Positions 30,984 to 64,000 of a stretch of DNA of 64,000 nt are shown here, one piece after another (positions within the stretch are counted from its first letter, which is position 1; each line of letters starts with the position of its first letter). Under the pieces are notes generated by a model that was given only the letters and a program-made list of their open reading frames with translations, had not been told where the DNA came from and searched no databases. A program made the position numbers and the translations under genes. The stretch covers positions 30,114,403 to 30,178,402 of the forward strand of contig NC_068996.1 of NCBI RefSeq assembly GCF_001194135.2, given 5' to 3'. The DNA is from Octopus bimaculoides. Its lineage: Eukaryota.

Positions 30984-31023
<40 letters not shown>

Positions 31024-37000: not shown

Positions 37001-40000
37001 ACGTAGTAAGACCTTGTTGTGTCTGGGGAGAATCATTATGCCAATATTATTAACACATACACTGGTTCAATTCCATTTGCTTTTTTTTTTGTCAATTGGT
37101 TAAATATGCAACTAACTAATCAATTGTTTGTTTAATTTGGTTAAACAATAAGTCTTTTGTTTGTCAAAACTTTTTCATTGCTACTTGCAACCTTTTCAAT
37201 GACTTTTCAATTGACTAATAATAAAGGAGTGGAATTGAACCAGTGTGTGTGTTAATAATATTGACATAATGACTCTCCCTAGACATAACAAAATTTGTTC
37301 CAACCCATTTGCAAACCAACAAAACCTTAGTAAGACTTACTAGAATCAAAATACTAAAAAAATAAACAAAAAGAATGTATTATTTCACTCATTACTTCTA
37401 GAAAGTTTCATATAATTTTTTAAGTTGCAAATACTGCATCAAGTCTTTAGAATCAATATATCTGTAAGTGCTAAGCAACTATTGACACTTAAAACAGAAC
37501 TCTTTCACTAGCACCTTGTTTATATTCAACTGTTAGACATTCACTTGAGGACCTGACACATCCATATTGACTGGTCTTTTGTTGCCAATTTTTCTTTCAT
37601 AATTTTTCACTTTTTGGAAACATTTTTAATTCTTTGTCTTTCATCTTTTTATATTATAACATTGCCTGTAATTTATATGTAATACCAGCATATGTTGTTA
37701 AATCTGTTAAATATTTTCTCTAAATAATAGTGTATGAATTATAATGATACAGTGTATGTGGTTCCGTCCAACCTACTGTAATGTGCGGAAACTATGCAGA
37801 CATAGGTGGGATGACAAACTGAACATATTAACATTTTTTTTCTTATCAGAGCTGTTACACTATATTGAAAATTATTCTCTAATTAGAAAATATCAGATTT
37901 AAGAACTCTAACACACTGCTAAATTCTAGATCTGAAACTTTTAGCAATTGTAAGCATATGACTAACTTCCTATTGATGAAGTGGAGAGTGCCACTATCTC
38001 TGGATTGACTAACTGTACCACAGACTCTAAGCCACTGTAATTAGTGTGGATGCCTTTATATTGTTAATGTATTTATGCATCCTGTTCAGTATACACTTTG
38101 TTTTTAATGTTTGTATACAATAAAATTAATTTACTAAGATTAATTAGTTATATTTCTTTTTTTTTTTCAGATATCAGATATCAAATCTGTAAATCAAAGA
38201 GTATCATCACTATTATTTCGAGTGAAATATGAAGAAATCATAAATGACATCAAGCCTGTGAGTGATTATATTTCCACTAATTAGTTTTAATGAACAACCT
38301 CTCAGATCTGGGCCCTTGCATCTAATTTTACCTTTCACTTGGGCTCTTGCGCAAAAAAATAGCTGCACATCCAGCTCAAGAGTAATAATTGCAAGCAAAC
38401 TAATGGACAGAATAAAAAAAAAAATTCAGGAGAATAACAATAATAGGCCTATCTCTCAATTAGTTATTTGTTAATATATATATATATATATATATATANN
38501 NNNNNNNNNNNNNNNNNNNNNNNNNNNNNNNNNNNNNNNNNNNNNNNNNNNNNNNNNNNNNNNNNNNNNNNNNNNNNNNNNNNNNNNNNNNNNNNNNNNN
38601 NNNNNNNNNNNNNNNNNNNNNNNNNNNNNNNNNNNNNNNNNNNNNNNNNNNNNNNNNNNNNNNNNNNNNNNNNNNNNNNNNNNNNNNNNNNNNNNNNNNN
38701 NNNNNNNNNNNNNNNNNNNNNNNNNNNNNNNNNNNNNNNNNNNNNNNNNNNNNNNNNNNNNNNNNNNNNNNNNNNNNNNNNNNNNNNNNNNNNNNNNNNN
38801 NNNNNNNNNNNNNNNNNNNNNNNNNNNNNNNNNNNNNNNNNNNNNNNNNNNNNNNNNNNNNNNNNNNNNNNNNNNNNNNNNNNNNNNNNNNNNNNNNNNN
38901 NNNNNNNNNNNNNNNNNNNNNNNNNNNNNNNNNNNNNNNNNNGAAAGTATGATAGGCGAGCCAGCCCATCATCTTCCCTCACGGATTACCATGTGCGTCG
39001 CAGGCGGTACCGCAGAAAATCTGTGGTTTACTATCCGGGAGTGAATAATTAATTATTACAATTGAAAGGGTAAAGGATTATCAATTTATTAATAAATTAA
39101 TAATTAATAATTTTTACCAAGCCCTTCGGTATGTAAGCACCATTATCGGTGTGGAACTTATTTAAAAGTTCTTATACATTTATAAACAAAATTAAGGGAT
39201 CAGCAACAGGTTGCTTCACCACATACCGAAGTTCAGAAATAGCAGCTAAAAATGCTGAAACTCCAACAGATAGCAGTTACCCGCAACTCAATATATATAT
39301 ATTAATTTATCCTTAAAGCCACTATTGGCTAGGGCATTGTTGTATGAGGGGGCTGCCTTTTCAAAAATTTCTTTAGAGGAAAAGAGGTTAGAAACTCTGT
39401 TAATAATGTTAGCTATCAGGTTTTTGAATACTACAGAGGAGTGACAATCAGAATAATAATAAAAGACCTAGGAAAATAATTTAGTCCCCCCCTCTTTCCC
39501 TTAATGTAAAAACTAACATAGGTAAGAAGATTCCTGTCTTTCCTAGACCAATGTTTTCCAGAAAATCAGAGGTACAGGAAAACGTTTAACAGGCGCTCAG
39601 TGAAATTATATAGCTGCTGCCCCAATATGAAAAGCGTCATTACATGAGAACAACATCCAGGAACCTGTCCACTCAACCAGAGATGTATGATTAAATCCTT
39701 CATATATGGGGAAGAAGTTAGAGCCACACTAGATGATAACACAACTGATAAGAAGAGCTATATCAGACTATGTGAAGGAAAATTCAAAAACTGCTATGCT
39801 AATCACATATCTTCTTTCTGACACAGGAACAAAAGTAAAGCTATTAAGTTGGCCAGCGACTGATGGGGTTTGAAGACAAATGCAACACCACATGCAATAA
39901 AGTGGAAAATAGTTGAAAAGTCTACCCTGTATGTTAATGGATCAAAAAATGTAAGCTATGTGTACCTGAAAAATATCAGATCTAAGAATTCTAACACACT

Positions 40001-40460: not shown

Positions 40461-40778
40461 NNNNNNNNNNNNNNNNNNNNNNNNNNNNNNNNNNNNNNNN
40501 NNNNNNNNNNNNNNNNNNNNNNNNNNNNNNNNNNNNNNNNNNNNNNNNNNNNNNNNNNNNNNNNNNNNNNNNNNNNNNNNNNNNNNNNNNNNNNNNNNNN
40601 NNNNNNNNNNNNNNNNNNNNNNNNNNNNNNNNNNNNNNNNNNNNNNNNNNNNNNNNNNNNNNNNNNNNNNNNNNNNNNNNNNNNNNNNNNNNNNNNNNNN
40701 NNNNNNNNNNNNNNNNNNNNNNNNNNNNNNNNNNNNNNNNNNNNNNNNNNNNNNNNNNNNNNNNNNNNNNNNNNNNNN

Positions 40779-43800: not shown

Positions 43801-46800
43801 TGTTAAGGTCACATGAGAGAGAGTTTTTGTGCTATTTCTGGAGCCCTTTTTTTTATCTATAAATAGCCCTGCTTCATCCATGCCAGTTTGTCACGACCTC
43901 AGACCTTTTCAAGTCTAGTCGTAGACCACACACCAACCAGCCAGTTTCCAGCGACGACATCAACACCACCGATCTACTGTCTACTACAGTTCCATTCCCA
44001 ACATCACCACTAGAGTACCCGCACCAACAACAGTAACCGCGGTTCCATCTCAACACTGTTTGTGTGGATTGTTTCCACCTCGAAAATAACAGCCAGAACA
44101 ACCTGCGAGAATCTTTTGTATTCAAGTAACCGGCTTGGCATAGAAGCCTCAACTTCACTCACAACATGTGACACTTCAGCTCTGCCTACAGACATTCTAC
44201 CTACTGTGTAACTCTTCTATGAACTGGTACTTTCTTATCTTTGTGTTCAGGACTCTTATAGTCTATTGTTAAAGACTCTTATTCCATGCTCTGTATTTCT
44301 CACTCACACACACATATTGTTGTATGCATACTCTCTATATATATATATATATCTAATGGTTGTGTCTCTGCCTCTCACTCTTTATTTGCTGGCACTTGCT
44401 CGTATCTCACATTGCGAGCTTTCTTATGTTATATTACATGTTTTGTGTCGACCATGCAACACGTTAAAAGGACCTTGTTTCCATACGTCGCCATTCTCCT
44501 TAGGTTCGCATGGTCGTTCTATTACAGGTATATTACTATTACTGTTACAATTCCAATGTGGCTGTATCATGTGTTTTGCATTGCAGTTTACATCTTCTTT
44601 CTTGGTATTTTGATGTATACGTTTGATAGTTCCACTAGATGGGTTATTGAACCGTTGTTTCATTTTACTATTATTAATGCTGTGCATATGCTGCTCTAAC
44701 TTAATAGAGTTAACATAAGATACCTTGATGGTGTGTCTATTAAAAATAGCATAGTATCTATTTGATTTTGGGAAACATTTGTCCGAGGCAGCAAAAGAAT
44801 TCCCTAGTGGTCTTTGTTGAAACATGTGAACTGAAATTGGGTTGTACCAGAGGACATCGTGATTCCTATATTTGTTGTTTGGTGTGTTGTACAGAATTGG
44901 GACAATTTATTGTGTTATGAGGAGTAGAATTATTGTGTAGTTTATTGCCTTGACCAATTCTTCCTGGTCTGTATTCTTGATCTGAGTCAGTTTGCTTACC
45001 ATAACATTGTGCAATGTGTATTATTATTGGAGGAATTGGGAGAGATATATGTGCCTGTGTCCTGTATGTATCGAATTTTCTCACAATATCCAGCCCAAGC
45101 TAAAACACTATTATGATATGGTGCATGTGATTCCAAAATTTTGTATTAGCAGATAATCTAGATATTCTTGTTGAAATATTCTTAACTAATCCCTGTATTA
45201 TTGAGGGTGGACGGTTGAAAATAAGATTAAGTATAACATAACTTGGTCCATAGTAAGGTACGCAAAACCATATGATATCATTTTCAGGAGATGCGAACTC
45301 TCCTCTGAGGAATCCTTGTCTATTCTGTGGACCAATGAGAAAATCATCATCATCATCATCATCATTGCTTTCCATGCTAGCATGGATTGGACGATTTGAC
45401 TGAGGACTGGTGAAACCGGATGGCAACACCAGGCTCCAATCTGATTTGGCAGAGTTTCTACAGCTGGATGCCCTTCCTAACGTCAACCACTCTGAGAGTG
45501 TAGTGGGTGCTTTTACGTGTCACCCGCACGAAGGCCAGTCAGGTGGTACTGGCAACGGCCACGCTCAAAATGGTGTATTTTATGTGCCACCCGCACAAGA
45601 GCCAGTCCAGGGGCACTGGCAACGATCTTGCTCGAAAATCCTTACACATGTCACNNNNNNNNNNNNNNNNNNNNNNNNNNNNNNNNNNNNNNNNNNNNNN
45701 NNNNNNNNNNNNNNNNNNNNNNNNNNNNNNNNNNNNNNNNNNNNNNNNNNNNNNNNNNNNNNNNNNNNNNNNNNNNNNNNNNNNNNNNNNNNNNNNNNNN
45801 NNNNNNNNNNNNNNNNNNNNNNNNNNNNNNNNNNNNNNNNNNNNNNNNNNNNNNNNNNNNNNNNNNNNNNNNNNNNNNNNNNNNNNNNNNNNNNNNNNNN
45901 NNNNNNNNNNNNNNNNNNNNNNNNNNNNNNNNNNNNNNNNNNNNNNNNNNNNNNNNNNNNNNNNNNNNNNNNNNNNNNNNNNNNNNNNNNNNNNNNNNNN
46001 NNNNNNNNNNNNNNNNNNNNNNNNNNNNNNNNNNNNNNNNNNNNNNNNNNNNNNNNNNNNNNNNNNNNNNNNNNNNNNNNNNNNNNNNNNNNNNNNNNNN
46101 NNNNNNNNNNNNNNNNNNNNNNNNNNNNNNNNNNNNNNNNNNNNNNNNNNNNNNNNNNNNNNNNNNNNNNNNNNNNNNNNNNNNNNNNNNNNNNGCAATC
46201 GTCTCTCTTGCACACCACAACTGATGCTTCTTATGTTCAGCTTTTCTCTCAAGATACTTACACTCTGTCGGGTATGCACACTGACATTGCACATCCGACA
46301 GAGCATACTGGCTTCATTCCTTGCGAGCTTACGCATGTCCTCAGCAGTCACAGCCCATGTTTCACTGCCATGTAGCATGGCTGTTTGTACACATGCGTCA
46401 TACAGTCTGTCTTTTACTCTGAGTGAGAGTCCCTTTGTCGCCAGCAGAGGTAAGAGCTCTCTGAACTTTGCCCAGGTTATTCTTATTCTAGCAGCTACAC
46501 TTTCAGCGAGCTACAAAATCATTAATAGAATTTCTGAAAGACTCTCAAGATGCTGATATGCATATAAATGCACTTTCACTCAATGCAGTGGGAATGAATT
46601 TGAGTAACTATCAATGTAATTAACAATCATAATTCACCTGAAGATATAGCTGAATTAAATTTATCTCTAACCTCCCCATTGTTATAAACGCCAAGTAGCT
46701 ATTTAATTTGCTATGTGAATATGTGTGCCAAGCCACACATGTGCGTATGCTTACGTCTTTGTGGATGTCTGTATGAGCGAGTGTACATGTGCCATACAAC

Positions 46801-49800
46801 CTACATGAGGGCATTTATATATTCATATCTATTAAGTTATATTTAATTCATTTTTCACTGTATTGTGTGTTCATTTCTTAGTTTGCATCTGTTATTTTTT
46901 ATTATTTATGTTCTACATAAATGAAGTTATATCCTTTAATTTGCTGCTTTTCTTTATACGAACTGAGAAGATACATTGCGAAACTGTTATTTTAATGAGT
47001 TATCTCTATTTATCACACGAAGAGACACATCTACACTATTGGATGCTCTTGAACCAGTTGTTAAGTATTCCACTCATGAGGGATCAATGCTAGGTGGGTC
47101 AAAACAATTGTAGTAATTAATAAAAGTTCTCATATCTTCTGCCTCATTAACCAAGTACACAACAAACGCTGTGAAAGTGAATGTGCTTTACCAGTGAGCT
47201 ACCAGGTATAAAACATATATTCATTATATAATATGTGTGTGTGTGTGTGTACACGTACGTACACATAGAGTACAACATGTATTAAGTACTTTCTCTCATT
47301 TGCAAAACCAAATGTGTGGAATATTGACTTCTCACAGCTTTGCTTGTGTTAATGGTAATATGACATTTATATTCCTTACTGACAAATGAGATTAGCTGCT
47401 CAAAGACTTGTAGAATAAAAGTTACTTCAGTTGATAAGCCAATATAAATTAGCAACAGGAAGGGTATCCAGCTATAAAATTTTGCATCAAATACATCCCA
47501 TCTAACCCATGTTACCATGGAAAAATAGATCTGAAACAATCAAACAATTATATTTTATTTTTAAAGAAGAAATCTTAAGGCTTAGTTACTCAAATACTTC
47601 AGTAGCTACTCTCTGTTATCAGTTTTCTGCTTCATAGTACTTTTATTTATTCCATTTGTAAAAATCAAACACACTTCTACCTATATATATCATCCTCATT
47701 ATTCTATGTTCATTTCTCCATGCTTGCATGGTTTGGATGGATGCCATATCATCTTGCTATTTATTGCAGACCTTCAACTAAAGAAACCACAAGTATCTGT
47801 TTTTTATGTTTTCATTTGGTATACTTTTATGGTTGGATGCCTTTCTACTACCAGCCATATAACAGTATCGTTTTGGTGCATTTTATCATACCATTGGCAT
47901 TAGGAAGGTTGAATGCAATGAAACTAAATATTTCTTTTTAGTTATGTCATTTTTTTAAAATTCAGAATCACTCTTCTCCTACATAAGTCACTTATGTGTA
48001 GCATCCAAAGTTCATATATCTCCATTTTATTTCTCATAACTGTTTTCGTAATTAACTTATTTGTATTGATGTCTTCCATCAGAGTATTGTAGCCATAACA
48101 CAAGCATTTGACCAAGTTAGAAGCAGTGCAAAGTTTTCCAGTATAATGACATTGATATTAAGTATTGGCAACTATATGAATACTGGGTCTAGAAATGCTG
48201 AATCAATAGGTTTTGAAATATCTTACCTCAATAAGGTATGTAAAAACTGGATTTATCCTTTTTTTTTCTTTTTTTTTATCCAAAAATTTATATGATATTC
48301 ATATTGGTTGTGTGGTAAGAAGTTTGCTTCCCAGCCACCTGGTTCCAGGTTCAGTCTCATTGTGTAACACCTTAGGCAAGTGTCTTCTACTAGAGCCCCA
48401 GGCTGACCAAAGCTATGTAAGTGGATTTGGTAGACAGAAACTGAAAAAAGCCTGTCGTGTGTGTCTTTGTGTTTATGTCCCCGTAACTTAGTTCAGCAAA
48501 AGAGGCTGATAGAATAAGTACCAGGCTTAAGATAAAAATAAGTATAGGGGTCTCAACTAAAATTCTTCAAGTGGTGCTCCAGCATGACCACAGTCTAATG
48601 ACTGGAACAAATAAAAGATGAAAGATATTAAAGTATTATATGTAAAGCATCTCAACTAGAATAACTTATTTCTCCTTTTTAATTTTGAATTACATCTATT
48701 TATTCTAGATATTATTTCTAATTCACTAACACATTTTAATATTACTATCATATCTCATTTGAGCACAACCTCAAGATAGTATGTTATATTGGTCATATAA
48801 TAATTTTATAAGTCTGTTTTCCGCCTATCTTATCTCTCTTTTACATACCAAAGTTGTTGCTTATCAAAGCCTAAATTCTTTAAATTTCTTTTTGTTGTTA
48901 GAAATTCTGTCTATTGTGCTATCAGTTTAGTTTTACAGGCAATTATTCTCATAGTATACTTATTACAACCATTACAGCTTAAATTTTTTCAGGTATGCCT
49001 GGTTAATTCACTCATTTCAATGAAAAAAAAATCATTGATTAGTGAAGTGTATCATTGTTTTATTCTGTCATAGAATAAGCAATCTTCTTTTAGAATAAAT
49101 TCCATCAAAATCTTTGTTTGATCTGCAAATCCTGATGGTGTAACAAGCAGTGTGTCTTGGGCATATGAGCTTGTCAAAACTTATCCCTCTCCAGATCTGA
49201 TCACAGCCATTTTTCTCTAGAAAGAGAGTAAAAGAGCCTTTTTTCAAATAGAGTTTGTATAAACTTTAAGGCTTGAAGACTTTGTATATAATTTAGGGCT
49301 TGAAAACTAAATCTCTGTGAGTGAAAGGAGAAAGAGAAAGTTAAATGACAACAGATCACTTTTGACATTTTTTTTTTAATCTGAGAAACTTTTAGTGATG
49401 AAGATAAAAATTACATTAATGTACTATACTTTCCTTCATTGTATTTATTGCCTATTGTGTGTGCCCATGCAAAATTTGCATGAACATATGATATGCAAAA
49501 ACAAAAGACATTTCAGCTACATCATCATCATCACAAAAATTTAATAAATCATTTAAAGCAGAGACATGGTGATATTAAGCAAATATTAACTTATCTTTTA
49601 AAAGGAAAGCTGTTATATATATACATTAATAATCGAGTGAATTCTTTTAATATTTTATATTAGTTCTCTAACCTTAATCTTTTCCTTTTCAACAGTTGAA
49701 AGATACTAAAACACAAGATGGATCCATGACATTGTTACATTTTATTGCACAAATTATACAAGATGATTATCCAGAATTAGAAAAGTTTGGAGATGATCTC

Positions 49801-52800
49801 ACATATATAGAGAAGGCATCGAAATGTAAATATGAGTGATTAAACTTCTTTTAACAAAACTATGAAGTTGCTTGAAATTTAAATTAAGAAGCATTCCTTG
49901 ATATTACTTTTCACATAGTTATTATTCAGCAATTAGCACATTTATTGATTTTATTATGTGTGCAAGATAATGGAATGCTGAAAAGTTCCTGGCTTTAAGG
50001 GTCTCGGGAGAGGCTTGGTTGGAGGCTCAACCTTCTGAGTTCCTTTACAGAGCTTAGAAAAACTGAAGGACCACTGTAATAAGTATGTGAATCTGAGAGG
50101 GGAATATGTTAAATAAAATCATAATTAACTGATCTCCTGTATTTTCTTTTTCCCAAAGCCAGGAACTTTTCAGCACCCTCTCATATCATCGTCATCATCA
50201 TCATATTATGTTCTCTTTCCATGTTAGCATGGGTTAATAATTGATATTGCATTATAATTCACATTTCATTTGCTATTAGGTGTACATTAATTTTATATTT
50301 TATTAGTCAAACATAATGACTTATACAAGTTGTGTATTTACAAATATAAACTAAAGCATGCTTTTAGAATTTGATACAGTAGTTACATATGGAATGTGCT
50401 ATGAATGTTAAATAGGAATATTTTAAGAAACACTAGTACAAGATTTTAGCTCTTAACGAACTGAGTATGATTCTCTTTAGTTTTTCTGTTAGCTATTGTT
50501 GATGTTTTTAAGGTAAATATAATCCACTACATTATATTTCCCCTTCTGTATATACCTACAGCCCTTCTGTTTTATAATAATGTAAATTAATATTAAAAAA
50601 CAATAGGATATTTGAATACACAGTTTAAATGTATGAGATAGAATTTATGTTTACAAAAAATGCATTCAATTCTGTCTATTTTTTCAAATCATTTACTACT
50701 GTGATTGATGTTTCTTTTTGTTTAGCTTCTGATGAACAATTACAAAAGAACTTGAAAGCCTTTAAAAAGAATTTGAACCAACTGGAAATAGATTTAAAAA
50801 ATGCTGCTAATTCAAAGCTTCAAGGAGATAAATTTGTAGAAAAACTTGAAATATCCTTTGGAAAGTAAATGTTTATGTAGTGAATTATATATATTATATA
50901 TATATTTATGTTATCAATGTTAGACGAATGAAAATGGAGTGCTCAAGGCATGTCATAGAAGATAGTTTTTTTTTAATAAAACATTAGCTGAGAGTTTGTT
51001 TCATGAAGTTTCATGCCAATGCAATCATCAGGCAAAATCAGTAAGATTTATACATCAATTGATGTGTGCAGGTGATCTGGTATTTTAGTTATTTCATTGG
51101 TTGTATGCTGTATCTTTGGTGTGGTGTTTATATTTCATGAAATTGTAGGTGGAGGATGTTATTAATTAACTTGTGTATGGTAAGTTGCCTCCAAAGCAGC
51201 TGGTGACCATTTCCTTAATGTGCAGAGGAATATAGTAGTCATCAAGGGCTGCATATATGAGGGCATGAGGAATTGATCCATATGCATTTACCAGATCTAG
51301 CCAGACCACTGTCAAGTCACCTTTGCTTCTCTTTGTCTCCTGGATCAGCTATATATATATGTATATATGTATGTCTGTTTGTATTTGTATGTGTATATAT
51401 GTATTTTGGATTTGTGTTTGAATGTGTGTGTATATATGTGTATGTAAATATAGTTCAAATTTATAGGAAACAAAAGACAAAGACAGGTGAAGAAACAACA
51501 AGCAGGTTTATTAGTTTAATGCTTGGGAAGAATGGAAAAGTCTTTGATGTTTCGAGCCTATGCTCTTCATCAGTAAGAGGAAAAAATGGAGAGAGAGAAA
51601 ATGTGTAGGAATTAACAGTTCAACCTGATGAAATGACTGAAAGAAAGAAGCTGAGTGAACAGGAGATAATAATGGTGGCCCATGTTTGTGTATGTAAGAA
51701 TGCTGTTTGTGAATGGGAGCGAGCGCATGTGAATGTATATGTGGGTGAACTTAAAACTGTGTGGGCCTGTGTATGTGTATAAGTAACCTAGTGCATATAT
51801 TGTGTTGAGTGATGTGCTTTTTGTGTATGTGTGTGAGGCTATCATGTATGTGCACATGTGCAAACATTTGTGTAGCAGTTAATGTGTGCTTGTTCACGTG
51901 GTGTGTGGGTGACCCTATAGTATGTATTGTGTGTGTTTATGTGAAAAACTTGTATGTGCGTTGTGTGCATGTCTATATTATGTGTTCAGGCATGTTATGT
52001 GCATTGTGTGTGTTTTTAAGAGTGAATATTGTGTTGTGGGGGAATGCATAGAAGCATGAAGTGGGATATGGGTGATGAGTTAGGGGTTGGGAGGTATTGG
52101 GTGCTAGTGTGTGAATGCATATGAATGTGCACAATGGTGTGTGGTGTGGATACTGAGTTGAACAGTGTGCAGGGGTGTTTATGTAGTGGTGTGTGTGAAG
52201 AGAGTACTGGCGAGCATGTGTGGGTATGCACATAATGGTGTGTGATGTGATGAGGATACTTGGGTGCTAGTACCTGTGGAGTAGGAAGGTGTGTGAATGC
52301 ATGTGAGTATGTGGGTGTGTGCATAATGGTGTGGGTATGAGTATTAAGTTGAACAGTGTATGGGTGTTTGTATAATGGTGTGTGTGGTGAGGGGCAGTGC
52401 CTAAAACATCGATCAAAGAATATAAGTAGTGATCATGATACACACCACAAAGAAATGATCAAGCTCAGTAGCAATCTATTAAGCAACAACTACCCCCAAA
52501 AGCATACTCTCCACTCCAATTAAGAAGAAAAGAGAGGATGAAATCAATAAACTGTTCACAGTCTGCCTAACCTATTTGAAAGGCCTCTCCGCAAAGATAC
52601 AAAAGATATGCGGCCCATATGACATCAGGACAGTATTCAAGAGTAATACGACACTTCGCAAATATCTCCTTCGAGTAAAACCACCAATAGAAGAGAATAT
52701 GACCAAAGACTGCCTGTACTCCATCCCAATATTTTCAACAAGATGTTAAGAGTTAAGCTCTGTTGGGTATTGGGTGTCACTCTCCTGGCATTTTTTCTAC

Positions 52801-55800
52801 TTATTAATTCTGTTTGTAATAAACTTGCCAGTGTTTAAAAATATTTACTTTTTTATGTATGATAGAGCAATTATTTTTATTTGTGTACTAAATATATTAT
52901 TTCTTAACAAAGTTTTTACCCGTTCCTGGATGATGCCAAAACTCAGTATGATGTATTGAACACTATGTATAAACAGATGGATATGAAATACACAGAACTT
53001 GCAAATTATTTTACTTTTGATAGGAAAAAATATTCATCTGAAGAATTTTTTCATGACATAAAGGAATTTCAAAGTAGTTTTGATGTATGTTATATTTTTT
53101 CATTTTTTAAAACTGCTTTTGAAAATATTTTAAAAGAATTGCATTTTTATGATCAATCATAACATTTATTTAAAAAAGTTTGTAGGTTGGCTTAGATTAC
53201 TGGTTGTAGTCATTTCTAATTCAGCTAAATACCCTCACAATTCTTACCTATACCGCCACTAAAAACGTTATAAATTTTATTATATACTGGAGAAACTAGT
53301 CCATTTAATATGTTCACTTCTTTGCAATGACAGTAAACAACTTATTAAAACAAATATTAAGAAAATTGGATTAAGTATTGAGTTGAACAGTGTATGGGTG
53401 TTTGTATAATGGTGTGTGTGGTGAGGGGCACTTGAACCACATTCTTAGCAATAATGCATAGACAAAATCAATGCTATTTTTCTATTACAATATGAAAACT
53501 TGTTAAAAAGAAATTTTGATCATCCCCATTTTGTGAAGTACTCTCTTGGTGTGTGCCATTTCTTATCATGTTTAAGAAATGATGACACCTTATCAAGACA
53601 CGTTCAGATCATTGTGTTGAGAAGTATAACATTGATTTGGCGCATATAAAGTTTGAAGTACATTGCGGCAAAATTTTGTGTAAGGAAAAAAACTTTTCTT
53701 CATAGTAGTTAATTAATTGATGGATCTGTTACATTTGCAATCAAGCGGCATGAACATGGACAGATAGAAACAAAGGGTATGGTAAAATAGAAGTCCTGAA
53801 GAGTTTTGTATAGAAAAGGAAAAGATAGAATAGATAGATAACTTTCTTTTGAACGTGGTAGAATATTGAAGTGTAACATTTTGTTTGAGAGTACCTCTTC
53901 ATTGTAGGTGTATGACAGTATAAGTAGTAATACATGTTCCCTCAAACTTTTAGTAAACAGTGTGTGCAAAAGTATGTGTCCACTGAATTGTTAATTACTA
54001 CATTACTTTTGGCAACTATGTTTTCTGCATGCATAAATTTCTTTTGTGTGCCAGTTGCAGAACATATGTGCACGAACAATGCTTTTAATCTTTTGGTGGC
54101 TTTGTATAGTGGTTACCCAGCTTATTTCATAATGTGAAACAGATGAGAGAAAAATCTTATCCTTGGATAGAATGCCGGACTATTTCAGAAAACTTTCCAA
54201 GATCTAGATAAGTTCTGCTTGTTTAAAATTTTTTCCCAGTTCCTTAAGTCAGTAAGGCTGAACACCTGTTAATTAGGAATACTTTCATAAGAAAATGTTT
54301 GGCAGTTGAAACCATTTACATATAATAGATTTATATTATTATTTTTGCTCCTTTTTACAAAAAGTTCCTTATAGTTGATATTTCTATTTTAGAATGAAAT
54401 TAATATTTAAATTATGTAATGTTTTCTGTCTGATCATTGACAACTGTAATTTTATATGCAAAGGAGACAGAAAGTAGGTATATGTTTTGGTTGTGTTAAA
54501 TGTCATCATTTTCAGTTTTTGACATACTATGTTTAATCTTTCATTGTTCTTTTTGTTTTCCATCCACCCATTTTAAATTTCCTAACTTATAGCACGCTTT
54601 GAAGGAAAACAAGCAACAAAAAGAAACACTTGCAAACATAGCACGAGCAAAAGAAGCTAAAGAAGCCCGAGAACGAGAACGAAAAGAAAAGTTACAACGG
54701 CAAAAGCAATTTATGGATGTTAATGCAGGTTTGTTTTGTAAATTTATTTTTACTGTTCTCAGTCAGGTTTAAATTATGTAAACACTGTTTTTAATCATAC
54801 TACCAGAATAGATTATTATCATCAATACCATAAGGGTAATATGATTCTTTACGCATTTTAAATCAAGTGACTTTTAAATACAAAATGATTTATATTTCAT
54901 GCCCTTTATAATGCCATAGTTCTATCAATTTAAAACAATTTTTTTGTATTGATTTATAAGGGAGAATATTTATGCCAAATGGAGCAGTGAATTTTGAATT
55001 TGGATTCACTGCCCATCCTATGCCAACTTCTCAACTGTAAATTGAGCAGAATATGTCCGTCAAACAAGCTAAAACAAACAAATTTGTACCTGTCTAGTCT
55101 AGAGCATGATTTTTACCTAGAGCCATGCTCTGGGTAAGGTAGGTCCAGATTAATCATGCAAATTTTGTTGGTATTCACATCATTCTTGTAGATTAGAAAG
55201 TACTGATAGACTCAGAATCTTAGAAGTGTTTTGAAATTATCTTCAAGGCAACAACTCTTAAGTTTAATTACTTATACTTCTAAAATTTTTTATAAGTTCT
55301 ATAACCACAAGACACTATAAGTCAGGATGGAAGTAATCAATTTAAACATCTCAAATTCCTTATAAAATATTCTGAACAAATTGTTGCAAAATGTCTATAT
55401 ATTTCCTTCAGATGAACCAAATCATGGAGTTGTTGATAATCTCTTGGAGGCACTAACAAGTGGTTCAGCTTTTAATATGAACCGAGAAAAGCGAGAAGGA
55501 AAACGGCGAGTTCCACGGCCAGGAGGTAATTTGTTTCCATTTCTTGTACCTATGGTTATATTTTAGATTTTTTTTTTTTTTTTGTGATTGTAAAACAGAG
55601 AGAGTAATATTAAGGAATTATGTGTACTCATAAAAAAAAATAATAGTAATGAATATCCATTCACTCAAAATTCTACATGATGTGTAAGACCTCAAAAAAT
55701 TTTGTTTAAGCCCTTAGTAAATTATAATACTCTATTCGTCTCAGAGATTCTAGATTGGAAAATGGTTTCATTGCACTTGGAATAGAAAAATAGATTTTTT

Positions 55801-56624
55801 TCCCTCTGGACACTAGCTTAACATAATGTCTATTTTGTTAAGAGAGAAAGAGACAATATTAAACTGTAACTTGTACATAATTGCCTTTTTTAACCATTGT
55901 TTTAGGTTCATTTTGTCTGAAGATCTTATGAGTGACATAATGTTACATGTTGAACAATTGTTTCTTTGGATAGGTGTCCTTCCTATTGTTAATCTTTATT
56001 TATGCCAGAAACTTATTAGACTGAGTCAAGCATAGTTATGTGAGTTGATCGAAGACTTATAACAATGTCTATGCAGTCAGATTTGAACTCGTAACCTAAT
56101 GCTCAGTCACACAGCATATTAACTGCATAATGATGGTGCACCTTAAAAAACGTAATGGTAACTGGTGTGTATGACATTTAAACAGTTTATCTCTTTAGAT
56201 AAGTATATCTGTAATATATACTTTTAATAGCTTTTTGGATTATCCTAAGTACTGAATAAGATGTTGATGCATTGATATAGAACTATCTTTTATGAGCTGC
56301 TAAGTGTATTGGTCATTTTAAACTTCATCCTGGTTGAAACTTCATACATTCCTTAAATTTATAAAAAAAATAATTGATTTATGAATGTCTTTTTTTCTAA
56401 AATCCTTGGTGAGATGTTATTTTATATTTTCAAATTTTTGCTTCCTTTTATGACACTTTTTTATTTATTCATTTGACTATATATTTTTTATCTATTTGCA
56501 ATTTTCCCCCCTCATAGACAGACCATCTTTACTTTCAAGATCCAGGCGTCAGGGTCGTTGTTCAGCTATGGTTACTAAGATAACTGATACTGAGGTGAAA
56601 AATAAGACCAATTTCTATGCATGA
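147..56624 (+). CDS. dia: Diaphanous-related formin, 5'-partial spliced gene: join(147..263,3873..3991,5882..6048,7615..8025,12018..12132,28524..28604,36487..36683,38171..38257,48083..48235,49696..49825,50726..50850,52920..53084,54593..54728,55412..55525,56518..56624), about 740 aa
   Basis: All 14 junctions are phase-compatible. The joined translation gives Diaphanous motifs in order: [31 protein letters not shown], poly-Pro FH1, [61 protein letters not shown], and [19 protein letters not shown]. Confidence 0.95.
1400..1560 (-). mobile_element. tRNA-derived SINE, family B
   Basis: Same sequence recurs at 13040-13230; the minus strand has an A/B-box-like head (GCTGGCAGAATC...). Confidence 0.7.
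1590..2960 (+). mobile_element. decayed RTE-clade LINE, reverse transcriptase fragment
   Basis: ORF 2403..2660 ([15 protein letters not shown]...[13 protein letters not shown]) is colinear with the copy at 19945-22795. Confidence 0.75.
3040..3178 (-). mobile_element. tRNA-derived SINE, family A, 5' part
   Basis: Similar to the full copies at 61978-62328 and 48305-48625. Confidence 0.6.
3873..3991 (+). CDS. dia: dia exon ([39 protein letters not shown])
   Basis: TACAG| acceptor, G|GTATGT donor, phase 2/1; highly conserved Diaphanous DID/dimerisation motif. Confidence 0.95.
4250..5336 (-). mobile_element. decayed piggyBac-like DNA transposon
   Basis: Minus strand begins TTAA|CCCCTTT. Fragments [18 protein letters not shown] and CDFLTGC resemble piggyBac transposase motifs. 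The other terminus was not found. Confidence 0.5.
5882..6048 (+). CDS. dia: dia exon, coiled coil (EQISNDK...[15 protein letters not shown]...MKEK)
   Basis: TAG| acceptor, AAG|GTTTCA donor, phase 1/0; contains the conserved ELTARQE motif. Confidence 0.9.
6762..7001 (-). mobile_element. RTE LINE 3' tail (or SINE sharing it), ending in (GAT)n
   Basis: Reverse complement of 22640-22795; similar pieces at about 40900-41200 (-) and 42680-42825 (+). Confidence 0.75.
7615..8025 (+). CDS. dia: dia exon, FH1 proline-rich domain and FH2 lasso start (...KIKRINWTQ)
   Basis: TTTCAG| acceptor, CAA|GTATGC donor, 137 codons; overlaps ORF 7636..8067. Confidence 0.95.
8700..8868 (-). mobile_element. SINE family A, 5' part
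   Basis: Similarity to 61978-62328. Confidence 0.65.
9790..10620 (-). mobile_element. decayed HERO/NeSL-type non-LTR retrotransposon with restriction-like endonuclease (RLE)
   Basis: Minus translation RPDMFWLS...IVEHTMPW*...KKTKYQDL...EVGC...AAETSS, plus upstream [15 protein letters not shown] and [15 protein letters not shown]. Confidence 0.7.
12018..12132 (+). CDS. dia: dia exon, FH2 ([20 protein letters not shown]...FSMKTQ)
   Basis: TATAG| acceptor, G|GTTAGT donor; carries the second FH2 lasso Trp (ENSFW). Confidence 0.9.
13040..13230 (-). mobile_element. tRNA-derived SINE, family B
   Basis: Matches 1400-1560. Confidence 0.7.
13540..14300. mobile_element. old foldback/long-TIR element
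   Basis: 13550-13700 is a diverged inverted copy of 14000-14145; sub-repeats continue to about 14300. Confidence 0.45.
16354..17797 (+). mobile_element. mariner (Tc1/mariner) transposon, decayed, with a duplicated 3' end
   Basis: TA-flanked TIRs (..GGTGGTATCAAAAA / TTTTTGATACCACC..); ORF 16545 with HTH ([14 protein letters not shown]); ORF 17063 with [15 protein letters not shown]. The C-terminus is repeated at 17365-17485. Confidence 0.88.
19945..22795 (+). mobile_element. 5'-truncated RTE-clade LINE: endonuclease end, RT, internal C4HC3 finger, 3' UTR with about 60-bp repeats, (GAT)n tail
   Basis: ORFs 19999, 20615, 20939 ([20 protein letters not shown]) and 21392; many stops and frameshifts. 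Confidence 0.9.
22800..23715 (-). mobile_element. Penelope-like element, family P1: GIY-YIG end and 3' region
   Basis: ORF 23493..23714 (KCPL..LVYKC..YIYIGQT..FK..H) plus shared sequence with 25051-25810, 42826-45080 and 45090-47210. Confidence 0.78.
23775..23965 (-). mobile_element. SINE family A, 5' part
   Basis: Similarity to 61978-62328. Confidence 0.65.
24010..24051 (-). ncRNA. minimal type I hammerhead ribozyme motif in a PLE-like terminal repeat
   Basis: Minus strand reads CTGGC-CTGAAGA-T-CTT(GTAC)AAG-T-GAAA-CT(AAG)AG-TA-GCAAG. Confidence 0.6.
24420..25020. repeat. degenerate minisatellite, about 10 copies of a ~62-bp unit
   Basis: Recurrent unit TACTGTTT..GAGG.GTGGTCAA..GTTCAAAA.GTAACAATTGAAGTGATAGTCATGGGG. 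Confidence 0.8.
25051..25810 (+). mobile_element. PLE family P1 3' fragment with a short inverted 5' copy of its end
   Basis: 25051-25125 is the reverse complement of about 25683-25759; the body matches 22800-23400 in reverse. Confidence 0.7.
25840..26091. repeat. compound (TA)/(TG)/(CA)/(TATC) microsatellite followed by an assembly gap (N 26092-26177)
   Basis: Direct reading. Confidence 0.9.
26247..26294 (-). ncRNA. degenerate minimal hammerhead motif (PLE-type)
   Basis: Minus strand GTCT-CTGATGG-...-GGAAA-C(AGCT)GT-A-AGAC; palindromic stem III; core position A9 mutated. Confidence 0.45.
26640..26985 (+). mobile_element. PLE GIY-YIG endonuclease C-terminal fragment
   Basis: [46 protein letters not shown]. 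Confidence 0.7.
27518..27908 (+). mobile_element. SINE family A, near full length
   Basis: Colinear with 48305-48625. Confidence 0.75.
28524..28604 (+). CDS. dia: dia exon, FH2 ([27 protein letters not shown])
   Basis: TGCAG| acceptor, T|GTAAGA donor, phase 1/1; KELKVLD..SAQNL motif. Confidence 0.93.
30893..30921 (-). ncRNA. hammerhead core with collapsed stem II (inverted twin of 31192-31237)
   Basis: Minus strand GACAC-CTGAAGA-AGCC-GAAA-CG-TT-GTGTT. Confidence 0.5.
31192..31237 (+). ncRNA. minimal type I hammerhead ribozyme motif (sense to the dia pre-mRNA)
   Basis: GACAT-CTGATGA-A-GGCTG(GAGGTTATAT)CAGCC-GAAA-TG-TT-GTGTT. Confidence 0.65.
31385..32400 (+). mobile_element. decayed CR1-clade LINE RT, with an internal duplication
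   Basis: [33 protein letters not shown] and CLDY motifs. Confidence 0.75.
32537..33114. mobile_element. 578-bp MITE with 8-bp TSD, nested inverted repeats and a central telomere-repeat palindrome
   Basis: TSD CAGTATTC at 32529-32536 and 33115-33122; TIR GGATCTTTTTTAAAACGGGGGCCACATTTTTCATTAA; inner arms about 32703-32772 and 32885-32954; centre (TAACCC)n AGGG(TTAGGG)3. Confidence 0.9.
34230..35250 (+). mobile_element. decayed R4/Dong-clade LINE C-terminus
   Basis: [17 protein letters not shown] and Y*WNV..KC.YNSP remnants. Confidence 0.5.
35890..36130 (-). mobile_element. R4/Dong-clade RLE fragment
   Basis: Minus translation [16 protein letters not shown]...[18 protein letters not shown]. 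Confidence 0.5.
36487..36683 (+). CDS. dia: dia exon, FH2 ([15 protein letters not shown]...[10 protein letters not shown])
   Basis: TTTCAG| acceptor, GTG|GTAAGT donor; overlaps ORF 36504..36725. Confidence 0.95.
37014..37291. mobile_element. small foldback/MITE with ~70-bp inverted arms
   Basis: 37014-37083 pairs with about 37222-37291. Confidence 0.6.
37887..38036 (+). mobile_element. 150-bp PLE 3' fragment, direct repeat of 39970-40119
   Basis: 7 mismatches in 150 bp by manual alignment. Confidence 0.85.
38171..38257 (+). CDS. dia: dia exon, FH2 ([29 protein letters not shown])
   Basis: Poly-T CAG| acceptor, CCT|GTGAGT donor, phase 0/0. Confidence 0.92.
39440..40119 (+). mobile_element. 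PLE RT end and GIY-YIG domain
   Basis: [28 protein letters not shown] and [22 protein letters not shown]. Confidence 0.75.
41925..42620 (+). mobile_element. RTE-BovB-like LINE C-terminus
   Basis: [36 protein letters not shown]. Confidence 0.85.
42826..45080 (-). mobile_element. PLE family P1 (RT end and GIY-YIG), interrupted by a solo LTR
   Basis: ORF 44424 ([21 protein letters not shown]) and ORF 43428 ([17 protein letters not shown]). Confidence 0.78.
43625..44526 (+). mobile_element. solo LTR, 902 bp, 4-bp TSD GGTA
   Basis: TGTAGTGAAAC...GGTCGTTCTATTACA; GGTA at 43621-43624 and 44527-44530. Strand is assumed. Confidence 0.85.
45090..47210 (+). mobile_element. PLE family P1 3' portion, interrupted by an RTE LINE
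   Basis: [24 protein letters not shown]; continues after 46514 and matches 25140-25810. Confidence 0.72.
45348..46514 (-). mobile_element. 5'-truncated RTE LINE, TSD AAAATCAT (contains N gap 45655-46194)
   Basis: [30 protein letters not shown]; TSD at 45340-45347 and 46515-46522. Confidence 0.85.
48083..48235 (+). CDS. dia: dia exon, FH2 post (SIVAITQAF...[24 protein letters not shown])
   Basis: CATCAG| acceptor, AAG|GTATGT donor; GNYMN signature. Confidence 0.96.
48305..48625 (+). mobile_element. SINE family A
   Basis: Head GGTTGTGTGGTAAGAAG..GGTTCAGTC; 70 nt after a dia exon. Confidence 0.8.
49696..49825 (+). CDS. dia: dia exon, FH2 ([18 protein letters not shown]...YIEKASK)
   Basis: AACAG| acceptor, T|GTAAAT donor; LxDTK...TLLHF motif. 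Confidence 0.95.
49968..50185. mobile_element. mariner-derived MITE
   Basis: TIR TGCTGAAAAGTTCCTGGCTTT / AAAGCCAGGAACTTTTCAGCA. Confidence 0.8.
50726..50850 (+). CDS. dia: dia exon, FH2 ([11 protein letters not shown]...GDKFVEKLE), ending at a U12 donor
   Basis: TTTAG| acceptor; homology ends at GAA|ATATCCTTT. Confidence 0.92.
51540..51580 (-). ncRNA. minimal hammerhead motif in a PLE terminal repeat inside the U12 intron
   Basis: Minus strand CTCTTA-CTGATGA-A-GAGC(ATAG)GCTC-GAAA-CA-TC-AAAGAC. Confidence 0.6.
52400..52730 (+). mobile_element. PLE RT-endonuclease linker fragment
   Basis: [39 protein letters not shown]. Confidence 0.7.
52920..53084 (+). CDS. dia: dia exon, FH2 C-terminal ([19 protein letters not shown]...[15 protein letters not shown])
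   Basis: AC| acceptor, GAT|GTATGT donor, 55 codons; EEFF motif. Confidence 0.92.
54593..54728 (+). CDS. dia: dia exon, FH2 end and basic linker ([11 protein letters not shown]...KQFMDVNA)
   Basis: TATAG| acceptor, G|GTTTGT donor; AxKEN motif. Confidence 0.93.
55412..55525 (+). CDS. dia: dia exon, DAD ([38 protein letters not shown])
   Basis: TTCAG| acceptor, G|GTAATT donor; DAD motif plus basic patch. Confidence 0.95.
56518..56624 (+). CDS. dia: probable last coding exon of dia ([13 protein letters not shown]...TNFYA*)
   Basis: Strong pyrimidine tract and CATAG|, correct phase 1; LSRSR resembles the tail of invertebrate Dia (recalled). Stop TGA at 56622-56624. A weak internal donor GAG|GTGAAA at 56595 could extend the gene. 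Confidence 0.6.
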
Positions 56625-56643
56625 AATGGCATTGTTGTTGCAG

Positions 56644-56693
<50 letters not shown>

Positions 56694-61977: not shown

Positions 61978-62328
61978 TACTCTTTTACTTGTTTCAGTCA
62001 TTTGACTGCGGCCATGTTGGAGCACCACCTTTAGTTGAGCAAATCAACCCCAGTACTTATTCTTTGTAAGCCTAGTACTTATTCTATCGGTCTCCTTTGC
62101 CGAACCGCTAAGTTACGGGGACGTAAACACACCAGCATCGGTTGTCAAGCAATATTGGGGGGGACAAACATATATACACACATACATATATACAACGGGC
62201 TTCTTTCAGTTTCCGTCTACCGAATCCACTCACAAGACTTTGGTCGGCCCGAGGCTATAGTAGAAGACACTTGAACCCGGAAACATGTGGTTGGTAAGCA
62301 AGCTACTTACCACACAGCCACTCCTATG
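61978..62328 (-). mobile_element. SINE family A, best-preserved copy
   Basis: Full head-to-tail similarity to 27518-27908 and 48305-48625; CpGs retained. Confidence 0.85.
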
Positions 62329-64000
62329 CCTATAGATGACATTGATTTGATTATATTATTTGTAAGCCACTTGATTCACTTACTGAAACAGGGTTATCAA
62401 TTAACTAGTGTTTTAGAAGTAACTTTTTACTTATTCCAAGATGTGAAGCAATTCATAGGTTTTAAACACCTAATTTTCTTCTGGTACTAAACTAAAATAC
62501 TTTAAATTATCTAGAACATTGTATGGTTAATAATATGAAATTATTTTGGGCATGCTTTTAATCCTGTATTTAACTATGTTCCTTACATCATTTCTATGAC
62601 TGATCTAACTTTCATTGTTCCAGCATGTTCTGTTTGTGCTCTGTTTATACAGTTGTGTCTTTGATTATTGTCTTAAAAGTTTTCAGTTTTTCTGTCATCA
62701 GTTATTGCCATGAGAACTGCATACTAAGTTTTTTAATGATTTCTAACCCATATTATATTGAGCATTTTGTGAAGTTATTATAATTTGAGCTATCTACTAA
62801 ACTGTTTTTCATTCACTTTGCCATTGTATTGTTATAAATTCAAAAACTTAATATTTCATGCACATTTAAATAGTTTTGCTATTTAATTTCCAAAAACATT
62901 AACACTTTAAATTCATTTATTTTATTGGCATGATTAATAATTTGCTTTTCTTGCATATTCTTTCTGTTTTTTAATCTATTTGTTTGCTTCTGGTATGTTA
63001 CTAATATAATTAATTTGGCCTGCTTTTATTTGTTTATTTAGTGTTTATTTTGTCTAAGAATGTTTTATTTAATCTTAAAAAAAACTTTGTTTTTATAATA
63101 TTTTGTTGCAGTATCATATAGTGAATATTGTGATTTGTAAATAAAACCTGTAAATCTCTCTACACTAAGTTGATGTATTTATTGTCATGAGATGAAATAG
63201 AAACTAACATGTTTAGCAGGCAGGGCCCTTCATAAAGAAGGAATCAGAAATGTGTTGAAGAATATATGAAAGATGTTAGAAGCTTGAAGATCACAAGAAA
63301 ATATAGTTAAAAATCCAAAAATATGTGAGAGAGAGAGAGAGAGAGAGAAATAAAAGAAAATAAATTAGCTAAAATTACAATTTTTGCTACGTTGGGATTT
63401 TTAAAAATGTAATTTTTCAGGATATGTCTTTAAATAGCAATAAATTATATTAGTGAATATACAAATGAATCCTGAGAATTTCAACCGTCCTCCTCCCATA
63501 CCAGCCCACAAGCAATATCATAGGGCTGAACCAATGCACTAAAGTACAATAGATTGCAGATTTTACAAGAAATGCAATAAATAATCAAAGAAAGCAGTAC
63601 AAATTTGTCCTCAGTAGTTTGGCATTGGAGAACTACATTTGAGAAGTCTGGAAAAAAATGGATGATCTCTTAGATTTGTGACTTCCGACTTTTGTAGAAA
63701 AAATATATACTGTATTTTATTTGTTTATCCTTTTCATTTTTTATTTTCTGTAGCATACAGTCATAGGTGCATGAACAAGGAAGGGAGTAATAGGAAGGAA
63801 AAGAAATAGTAGTATCAGGGGTTTACCTAGAGAGTGATAGGGGTGATGAGGAGAGTTAAGAAGGAGGAGATGCAGTGCTACACCATGCTATTTATGAGTG
63901 GGGAGAATGGTGTGTGAAGTGATAAGGTGATGATGAGAAGCCAGAATGTATTCTCAACTTGTTTTAAATAGCATAGTGACAGGAGAATTGGGGAAGTTAA

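What the first reader, a model, noticed from the sequence alone, without database searches (positions are those of the whole stretch)
50851..52919. Complete AT-AC minor-spliceosome intron in the FH2 domain
Seen: GAA|ATATCCTTT donor, TTCTTAAC branch site and TAC| acceptor. Only this pairing restores colinearity with Diaphanous. Unspliced read-through gives ISFGK-stop (TAA 50866-50868), which removes the FH2 end and the DAD. Known: U12 introns are rare, often slowly spliced and often mis-annotated; I recall vertebrate DIAPH genes as minor-intron genes. Inference: an ancient conserved control point for formin dosage.
Basis: partly seen in the sequence, partly recalled or inferred. Interest (0 to 1): 0.72.

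Follow-up and report, generated by a model that had tools for sequence, protein, structure and literature searches.

The report
Conserved AT-AC minor intron in octopus Diaphanous
The stretch is a genuine, cleanly spliced minor-spliceosome (U12-type, AT-AC) intron in the Octopus bimaculoides Diaphanous formin gene; it sits where vertebrate DIAPH1 and DIAPH2 have theirs, is already used in the public annotation, and is therefore correct but ordinary.

Summary
Window 50851-52919 (2069 nt, + strand) starts with ATATCCTTT. It has a TTCTTAAC branch site 12 nt before the 3' end and ends in TAC.

- **RNA evidence.** Transcript contigs from eight RNA runs of two octopus species, plus raw reads from three further runs, all join 50850 directly to 52920.
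- **No unspliced reads.** All 13 raw reads that reach the donor are spliced, and none enters the intron.
- **No use of the rival sites.** None uses a nested in-frame GT/AG pair (50865/52912).
- **Gene.** It is Octopus bimaculoides "protein diaphanous homolog 2". The intron lies inside the FH2 domain, upstream of the DAD, and is the only non-GT-AG intron of 14 in the window.
- **Conservation.** A U12-type intron sits at the same phase-0 codon boundary in all nine loci I read. These are two octopods, a bivalve, a gastropod, an annelid, a horseshoe crab, teleost and hamster DIAPH1, and bird DIAPH2. Seven are AT-AC and two are the U12 GT-AG subtype.
- **Prior knowledge.** The literature already lists all Diaphanous-related formins as minor-intron genes, and the public octopus protein models already use this junction.

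"Ancient and conserved" is supported. "Control point for formin dosage" is untested, and the little evidence here (no retention seen) does not favour it. Low interest; already known.

The parts
50726..50850 (+). Upstream exon (FH2 domain; ...[13 protein letters not shown]), preceded by a GT-AG intron
   Evidence: Transcript contig pieces in organism A and B runs; open frame in the gene model
50851..52919 (+). U12-type AT-AC intron, 2069 nt, phase 0
   Evidence: Joint 50850>52920 'AT..AC, skips 2069' in contigs of X1, X4, X12, X33. The same contiguity appears in X5 and X8 of a second species and in X30 and X34. 16 raw junction reads in X43-X45
50851..50859 (+). 5' splice site ATATCCTTT, a perfect match to the U12 donor consensus /[AG]TATCCTT
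   Evidence: Sequence; identical 9-mer in Argonauta, bivalve, annelid, bird and hamster orthologues
50866..50868 (+). In-frame TAA reached if the intron is retained (E-ISFGK-stop)
   Evidence: Sequence and translation
50865..50866 (+). Nested decoy GT (GTAAAT). Paired with AG 52911-52912 it is in frame and adds ISFGNFY. Not used
   Evidence: translation; zero read depth 50853-50885; not conserved in Argonauta
52901..52908 (+). Branch-site box TTCTTAAC (7 of 8 to consensus TCCTTAAC). The presumed branch A at 52907 is 12 nt from the 3' end of the intron
   Evidence: the same box and spacing in Argonauta; spacing is 10-14 nt in all nine orthologues
52911..52912 (+). Nested decoy AG, partner of the decoy GT at 50865. 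Not used
   Evidence: translation of the 50864>52913 pairing; no such joint listed and zero read depth 52750-52917; not conserved in Argonauta
52917..52919 (+). 3' splice site TAC|
52920..53084 (+). Downstream exon (end of FH2; [13 protein letters not shown]...EFQSSFD)
55412..55525 (+). Exon encoding the DAD core ([16 protein letters not shown]), which would be lost on intron retention
   Evidence: Pfam Drf_DAD at residues 673-687, below the curated cutoff

Best explanation
Window 50851-52919 is a constitutively and efficiently removed U12-dependent (minor-spliceosome) intron of the AT-AC subtype. It lies in the Octopus bimaculoides Diaphanous-related formin gene (annotated 'protein diaphanous homolog 2'), between codons 831 and 832 of the 1002-residue model P0149.

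Mechanism, inferred from the established model for this intron class: the U11/U12 di-snRNP recognises the donor ATATCCTTT (U11, later U6atac) together with the branch box TTCTTAAC (U12). The branch A lies 12 nt upstream of the terminal AC. U4atac/U6atac.U5 then completes catalysis and joins GAA|CCG, giving ...FVEKLE-PFLDD..., which is gap-free against other Diaphanous proteins.

The intron is orthologous to the minor intron of vertebrate DIAPH1 and DIAPH2. It was therefore already present, as a U12-type intron at this codon boundary, in the last common ancestor of protostomes and deuterostomes.

Shown here: the junction, the motifs, the gene context and the positional conservation. Inferred: dependence on the minor snRNPs.
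For: - **Motifs and coordinates.**
- **Contigs.** AT..AC joint in the contigs of four runs. The same exon contiguity appears in two runs of a second octopus species. Four deep runs each have a single contig that continues from 50850 with CCGTTCCTGG.
- **Raw reads.** 16 junction reads. 13 of 13 reads stop at 50850 and continue spliced.
- **Gene model.** 15 exons in one open frame, with 13 GT-AG introns and this one AT-AC.
- **Domains.** FH3, FH1, FH2 and DAD by Pfam.
- **Annotation.** 100% identity to O. bimaculoides diaphanous homolog 2, whose sequence contains FVEKLEPFLDD.
- **Orthologues.** U12-type introns at the same phase-0 position in nine loci, with donors [AG]TATCC[TC]T and branch boxes 10-14 nt from the 3' end.
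- **Literature.** Diaphanous-related formins are 100% minor-intron genes (PMC6865273). The DIAPH2 A-type intron is retained on CENATAC loss (10.1101/2020.08.06.239418). The DIAPH1 U12 intron is retained in RBM48 knock-out cells (10.1101/2020.07.18.209528). Molluscs are relatively rich in minor introns and Octopus sinensis is in the survey (PMC10639083).
Against: - Dependence on U11/U12/U4atac/U6atac was not and cannot be tested here.
- No minor snRNA gene lies in the window, so the machinery in this species is taken from the literature.
- The branch box departs from consensus at one position (TTCTTAAC against TCCTTAAC).
- 'Efficiently removed' rests on few raw reads, because only about 6% of each run was sampled.
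Confidence: 0.95

Rival explanations
1. One reading: the U12 intron is a regulated, rate-limiting step (a dosage valve). Slow or conditional minor splicing leaves the intron in. The TAA at 50866-50868 then triggers nonsense-mediated decay, or yields a formin lacking the FH2 end and the DAD, so that formin output follows minor-spliceosome activity.
For: - The premature stop is 5 codons into the intron, with three or more exon junctions downstream.
- U12 type has been kept at this site across Bilateria.
- In human cells the DIAPH1 and DIAPH2 minor introns are retained when minor-spliceosome factors are lost.
Against: - No unspliced read was seen. 13 of 13 reads at the donor are spliced, and depth is zero at 50853-50885 and 52750-52917 in three RNA runs.
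- No RNA-contig run holds the exon-intron boundary words.
- The early stop is not conserved. The quail intron reads on for at least 17 codons.
- The RBM48 study notes that retention does not necessarily lower transcript levels.
- A pan-eukaryotic survey argues that neutral processes explain much of minor-intron retention (PMC10639083).
Confidence: 0.15
2. The real splice uses the nested U2-type pair GT 50865 / AG 52912. This is in frame and gives a 7-residue insertion (ISFGNFY), either as the main form or as an alternative isoform.
For: GTAAAT is a fair U2 donor and the pairing keeps the frame.
Against: - No joint 50864>52913 appears in any contig or raw-read set, even at a 1% reporting threshold.
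- Depth is zero at 50853-50864.
- Both sites are absent in Argonauta.
- The insertion breaks colinearity with all homologues.
Confidence: 0.02
3. It is an AT-AC intron removed by the major (U2-type) spliceosome, as a few AT-AC introns are.
For: Terminal dinucleotides alone do not decide the spliceosome type (established knowledge).
Against: - The donor is the full U12 box ATATCCTTT and a TCCTTAAC-like box lies 12 nt from the 3' end.
- Two orthologues have switched to GTATCCTTT...CAG while keeping both U12 boxes. That pattern is the mark of U12 type, not U2 type.
Confidence: 0.02

Closest known systems
The U12-type AT-AC intron of vertebrate DIAPH1 and DIAPH2 (minor-intron genes; the DIAPH2 intron is an 'A-type' intron in the CENATAC study)
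   Same: - Same codon boundary and phase 0: octopus FVEKLE|PF, hamster DIAPH1 FVEKMT|SF, teleost DIAPH1 FAEKMS|SF, quail DIAPH2 FVQKMS|IF.
- Same donor ATATCCTT (one change in the teleost).
- Branch box 11-14 nt from a terminal AC.
   Different: - Length ranges from 71 nt (Capitella) and 166 nt (teleost) to 12.6 kb (quail). The octopus intron is 2069 nt and carries repeats.
- The octopus branch box is TTCTTAAC rather than TCCTTAAC.
- DIAPH3 could not be checked here because the gene ranges were too long to fetch.
U12-type introns of the GT-AG subtype
   Same: The Candidula (gastropod) and Tachypleus (horseshoe crab) orthologues have GTATCCTTT...CAG at the same site with U12-like branch boxes. 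They show the known subtype switching within one orthologous intron.
   Different: The octopus intron has AT-AC termini, as about a quarter of human minor introns do (PMC10639083).
Minor introns as 'molecular switches' limited by unstable U6atac (mammalian model; recalled from memory, Younis et al. 2013, not read here)
   Same: A U12 intron with an early in-frame stop, in a gene with a dose-sensitive product.
   Different: No retention was detected in the octopus RNA sampled, and regulation is untested.

Membership tests
U12-type (minor-spliceosome) intron, AT-AC subtype | 5' splice site matching /[AG]TATCCTT | tested here: met
   ATATCCTTT at 50851-50859
U12-type (minor-spliceosome) intron, AT-AC subtype | Branch-site box resembling TCCTTAAC about 10-15 nt upstream of the 3' splice site | tested here: met
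   TTCTTAAC at 52901-52908, a 7 of 8 match, with the A 12 nt from the intron end
U12-type (minor-spliceosome) intron, AT-AC subtype | The AT...AC termini are really used in RNA | tested here: met
   Joint 50850>52920 in contigs of eight runs from two species and in 16 raw reads
U12-type (minor-spliceosome) intron, AT-AC subtype | Splicing depends on U11, U12, U4atac and U6atac snRNPs | not testable with these tools
   Needs knock-down or a compensatory-mutation assay
U12-type (minor-spliceosome) intron, AT-AC subtype | The organism has a minor spliceosome | not tested
   No snRNA gene in the window. The literature survey includes Octopus sinensis among species with conserved minor introns (PMC10639083)
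Orthologue of the DIAPH minor intron | Same position and phase in aligned protein, and U12 type in vertebrate DIAPH genes | tested here: met
   DIAPH1 (Seriola, Cricetulus) and DIAPH2 (Callipepla) checked at DNA level. DIAPH3 not checked
Diaphanous-related formin | GBD/FH3 - FH1 - FH2 - DAD architecture | tested here: met
   - FH2 E=5e-100 and FH3 E=6.5e-16.
- FH1 and DAD are present but below the Pfam cutoffs.
- The DAD core [10 protein letters not shown] is present.
- The GBD lies upstream of the window but is present in the 100%-identical model P0149
Regulated intron retention switch | Detectable intron-retaining transcripts whose level varies with condition | tested here: inconclusive
   0 of 13 reads unspliced, and zero depth in unique intron flanks in three runs. 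Only about 6% of each run was sampled, and tissues are unknown

The most novel reading that the evidence does not exclude
In cephalopods this deeply conserved AT-AC intron is kept as U12 type because its removal is conditionally limiting. An example would be particular tissues or developmental stages with low U6atac. Diaphanous dosage, or production of a truncated DAD-less form, would then be set by minor-spliceosome activity. The ancestral bilaterian Diaphanous gene would already have been wired this way.
Probability: 0.1. Interest if true: 0.4.

Novelty: already known. Interest (0 to 1): 0.15.

Why it matters
Little is at stake. The result confirms that the public octopus gene model is right at a site where GT-AG-only predictors fail. 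The quail DIAPH2 model shows such a failure, and a nested in-frame GT/AG decoy exists in the octopus.

It also gives a clean positional marker: one U12 intron kept at the same codon boundary in molluscs, an annelid, a chelicerate and vertebrates, with two AT-AC to GT-AG subtype switches. That is a useful textbook example and a possible anchor for studying minor-intron loss or conversion in formins. It does not open a new question.

Tried and rejected
- **Motif count alone.** RTATCCTT is not enriched in the window (5 found, 5.8 expected), so the motif count cannot carry the claim. The other + strand copies (5789, 46929) were checked against the gene model and are not exon ends.
- **Nested GT/AG alternative.** Considered and rejected on reads and on conservation.
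- **DIAPH3 and further arthropods.** Solea diaph3 (P0033) and Centruroides (P0182) are not on record. Macaca and Hoplias DIAPH3 gene ranges are too long, so no DNA was returned.
- **Upstream gene model.** Laying reads on 20001-40000 failed because of N gaps. The three exons there were placed by tblastn and splice sites, then verified by their summed length of 365 nt, which matches the transcript contig exactly.
- **Scans of the window.** Rfam and tRNA found nothing. The repeat scan of 44-64 kb gave only one weak inverted pair.
- **Non-bilaterians and insects.** Not reached. Protein searches and locus look-ups were exhausted, so the age of the intron beyond the bilaterian ancestor is undetermined.
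Full report
**What is in the sequence**

The coordinates in the finding are exact.
- The exon ends ...AAACTTGAA at 50850, and the next nine bases (50851-50859) are ATATCCTTT.
- TTCTTAAC lies at 52901-52908.
- The intron ends TTTTTAC at 52919, and the next exon begins CCGTTCCTGG at 52920.
- Joining 50850 to 52920 gives ...[10 protein letters not shown]|[13 protein letters not shown]...
- Reading through gives E-I-S-F-G-K-stop, with TAA at 50866-50868.

The donor 8-mer by itself is not beyond chance. RTATCCTT occurs 5 times in the window on both strands, against 5.8 expected from shuffles. The two other + strand copies (5789 and 46929) lie well inside introns of the gene model. What makes this copy significant is its context, not its occurrence.

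**RNA evidence**

Assembled transcript contigs from four RNA runs of the source species all carry a joint 50850>52920. The tool reports it as 'skips 2069, AT..AC', flanked by exons 50726-50850 and 52920-53084. Contigs from two runs of a second, closely related species show the same exon contiguity.

In four deep runs exactly one contig reaches 50850. It continues with CCGTTCCTGGATG..., and nothing covers 50854-50886.

Three 2026 runs are kept as raw paired-end RNA reads, with about 6% of each sampled.
- They give 16 reads across the AT..AC junction.
- In a narrow view, 13 reads reach 50850 and all 13 stop there. The spliced continuation is listed as a loose end for the seven reads of X43. Depth is 0 from 50853 to 50885.
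- Depth is also 0 in the unique intron sequence 52750-52917, just before the acceptor.
- The RNA depth seen inside the intron (about 51350-51570 and 52400-52730) comes from repeats. Those reads are 95-99% identical and run on into unrelated sequence.
- A search for runs holding the 31-mers that span the exon-intron boundary found none among the RNA-contig runs.

So the junction is real and is the only one seen. With 0 of 13 reads unspliced, the 95% upper bound on the unspliced fraction is about 20%. This is weak evidence against strong retention, not proof of none.

**A rival splice that had to be excluded**

GT at 50865 (GTAAAT) and AG at 52911-52912 form a nested U2-type pair. It is also in frame and would insert ISFGNFY. 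A GT-AG-only gene predictor could choose it. No contig or read supports it, even at a 1% reporting threshold. Neither site exists in the Argonauta orthologue.

**Gene context**

Transcript contig pieces plus homology give 15 exons in the window, in one uninterrupted frame:

| Exon | Coordinates |
|---|---|
| 1 | 146-263 |
| 2 | 3873-3991 |
| 3 | 5882-6048 |
| 4 | 7613-8025 |
| 5 | 12018-12132 |
| 6 | 28524-28604 |
| 7 | 36487-36683 |
| 8 | 38171-38257 |
| 9 | 48083-48235 |
| 10 | 49696-49825 |
| 11 | 50726-50850 |
| 12 | 52920-53084 |
| 13 | 54593-54728 |
| 14 | 55412-55525 |
| 15 | 56518-56597 |

- Of the 14 introns, 13 are GT-AG and only this one is AT-AC.
- The three exons not directly displayed sum to 365 nt, exactly the gap in the transcript contig coordinates.
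- Pfam finds FH2 at residues 255-621 of the 732-residue product (E=5e-100), and an FH3 fragment. FH1 and the DAD (673-687) score below their curated cutoffs.
- The intron follows residue 567.
- The product is 100% identical to 'protein diaphanous homolog 2 isoform X2 [Octopus bimaculoides]' (P0149, 1002 residues; the window covers residues 263-996). It is 94% identical to the Octopus sinensis protein.
- Both O. bimaculoides public models, the O. sinensis model and the Argonauta hians model contain FVEKLEPFLD. The AT-AC junction is therefore already in the public annotation.

**Conservation of position and type**

I fetched genomic loci for homologues and read the junction at the aligned codon boundary. 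consolidates them:

| Species and gene | Exon end and donor | Branch box | Distance to 3' end (nt) | 3' end |
|---|---|---|---|---|
| Octopus | FVEKLE\|ATATCCTTTG | TTCTTAAC | 12 | TAC\|PF |
| Argonauta | same donor | same box | 12 | TAC |
| Tegillarca (bivalve) | FSDVMN\|ATATCCTTTT | ACCTTAAC | 10 | CAC\|SF |
| Capitella (annelid) | FVEVMS\|ATATCCTTTC | TCCTTGAC | 14 | CAC\|NF |
| Seriola DIAPH1 | FAEKMS\|ATATCCTCTT | TCCTTAAC | 14 | CAC\|SF |
| Cricetulus DIAPH1 | FVEKMT\|ATATCCTTTC | TCCTTTAC | 13 | CAC\|SF |
| Callipepla DIAPH2 | FVQKMS\|ATATCCTTTT | TCCTTAAC | 11 | TAC\|IF |
| Candidula (gastropod) | FGEVMK\|GTATCCTTTA | CCCTTAAC | 11 | CAG\|VF |
| Tachypleus (horseshoe crab) | FEEVMS\|GTATCCTTTG | ACCTTGAT | 12 | CAG\|SF |

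- The quail gene was assigned to DIAPH2 by its best similarity, to a quail-family DIAP2 protein.
- All nine introns are phase 0 at the same boundary.
- All nine have U12-type donors and branch boxes. Seven are AT-AC and two are the GT-AG subtype.
- Lengths run from 71 nt to 12.6 kb.
- This is direct evidence that a U12-type intron stood at this site in the protostome-deuterostome ancestor.
- Subtype switching with retained U12 boxes also argues against a U2-type AT-AC intron.
- DIAPH3 and non-bilaterians could not be examined.

**What is already known**

- A review of minor-intron gene families states that 100% of diaphanous-related formin genes carry minor introns (PMC6865273).
- The CENATAC study lists DIAPH2 among mitotic regulators with significant A-type (AT-AN) minor-intron retention (10.1101/2020.08.06.239418).
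- An RBM48 knock-out study validated retention of the DIAPH1 U12 intron. It notes that retention does not necessarily reduce transcript levels (10.1101/2020.07.18.209528).
- A pan-eukaryotic survey reports relative minor-intron enrichment in molluscs and uses Octopus sinensis in its conservation matrix. It gives about 26% AT-AC among human minor introns and about 22% phase 0 on average. It argues that neutral processes may explain much of minor-intron evolution (PMC10639083).

The octopus intron is thus a correctly recognised member of a known, catalogued class, in a family known to carry it.

**How it most likely works**

By the established model for this intron class, the U11/U12 di-snRNP binds the donor box and the branch box cooperatively. 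The A at 52907 attacks the 5' splice site. U4atac/U6atac.U5 completes the reaction and joins GAA to CCG. This step is inferred and was not tested.

If the intron were retained, translation would stop after five extra residues. The stop would have three or more exon junctions downstream of it. By the usual 50-55 nt rule the transcript would then be a substrate for nonsense-mediated decay. Any protein made would lack the last 54 residues of FH2 and the DAD.

Whether that outcome is ever used for regulation in octopus is unknown. The data here show only the fully spliced form. The early stop is not conserved either: the quail intron reads on for at least 17 codons.

**Verdict**

The structural and evolutionary parts of the interpretation are supported. 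The 'control point for formin dosage' remains a hypothesis, without support from the RNA sampled. Novelty: already known. Interest: low.

Noticed in passing
window 52400-52728 (inside the intron, + strand): A sense-oriented fragment of an expressed repeat family, with an open piece ...[45 protein letters not shown] reads from other copies run on at 52728 with TGCAGCTGTGGTAGGTTATACAAAGGCGAA (CSCGRLYKGE). This resembles the start of the GIY-YIG domain of Penelope-like retroelements. That assignment is from memory and was not tested. The copy here is cut off at 52728.
   Followed up: partly
window 50865-50866 and 52911-52912: A nested in-frame GT/AG decoy pair would add ISFGNFY. It is unused in RNA and absent in Argonauta. 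It is a trap for GT-AG-only gene predictors.
   Followed up: yes
L001 43545-56457 (Callipepla squamata DIAPH2): The public protein model P0003 skips the exon before the U12 intron. It translates the last 42 nt of the intron (DLIPIGSFSLTKSY) as protein. This is a concrete case of U12-intron mis-annotation.
   Followed up: yes
window 55412-56597 and downstream: O. bimaculoides has two annotated C-termini. P0149 uses exon 56518-56597 (...PRPGDRPSLL...TDTEVLRDGLT). P0150 instead ends ...PRPGGAERRAHIRPRGCMTRETSGTSVC, like Argonauta. These are alternative 3' exons just after the DAD.
   Followed up: no
window 54593-54736: An Octopus sinensis isoform (P0165) has three extra residues (GLF) at the end of this exon (DVNAGLFDEPNHG against DVNADEPNHG). 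This suggests an alternative donor a few bases downstream of 54728.
   Followed up: no
window 6671-7337, 45335-46001, 56007-56673, 62010-62676: RNA-contig word depths of 1e4 to 1.6e5, far above the gene's exons (about 30-440). The contigs are many, short and 95-99% identical, which indicates very abundant expressed repeats. No Rfam family or tRNA matches.
   Followed up: partly
window 20042-20051, 26092-26177, 38499-38942, 40461-40778, 45655-46194: Five runs of N (assembly gaps), all inside introns of the formin gene. They blocked one read-laying run.
   Followed up: no
L004 14926-16633 (Candidula) and L008 44349-47035 (Tachypleus): The orthologous intron has switched to the U12 GT-AG subtype (GTATCCTTT...CAG) in a gastropod and a horseshoe crab. 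It stays AT-AC in seven other taxa.
   Followed up: yes
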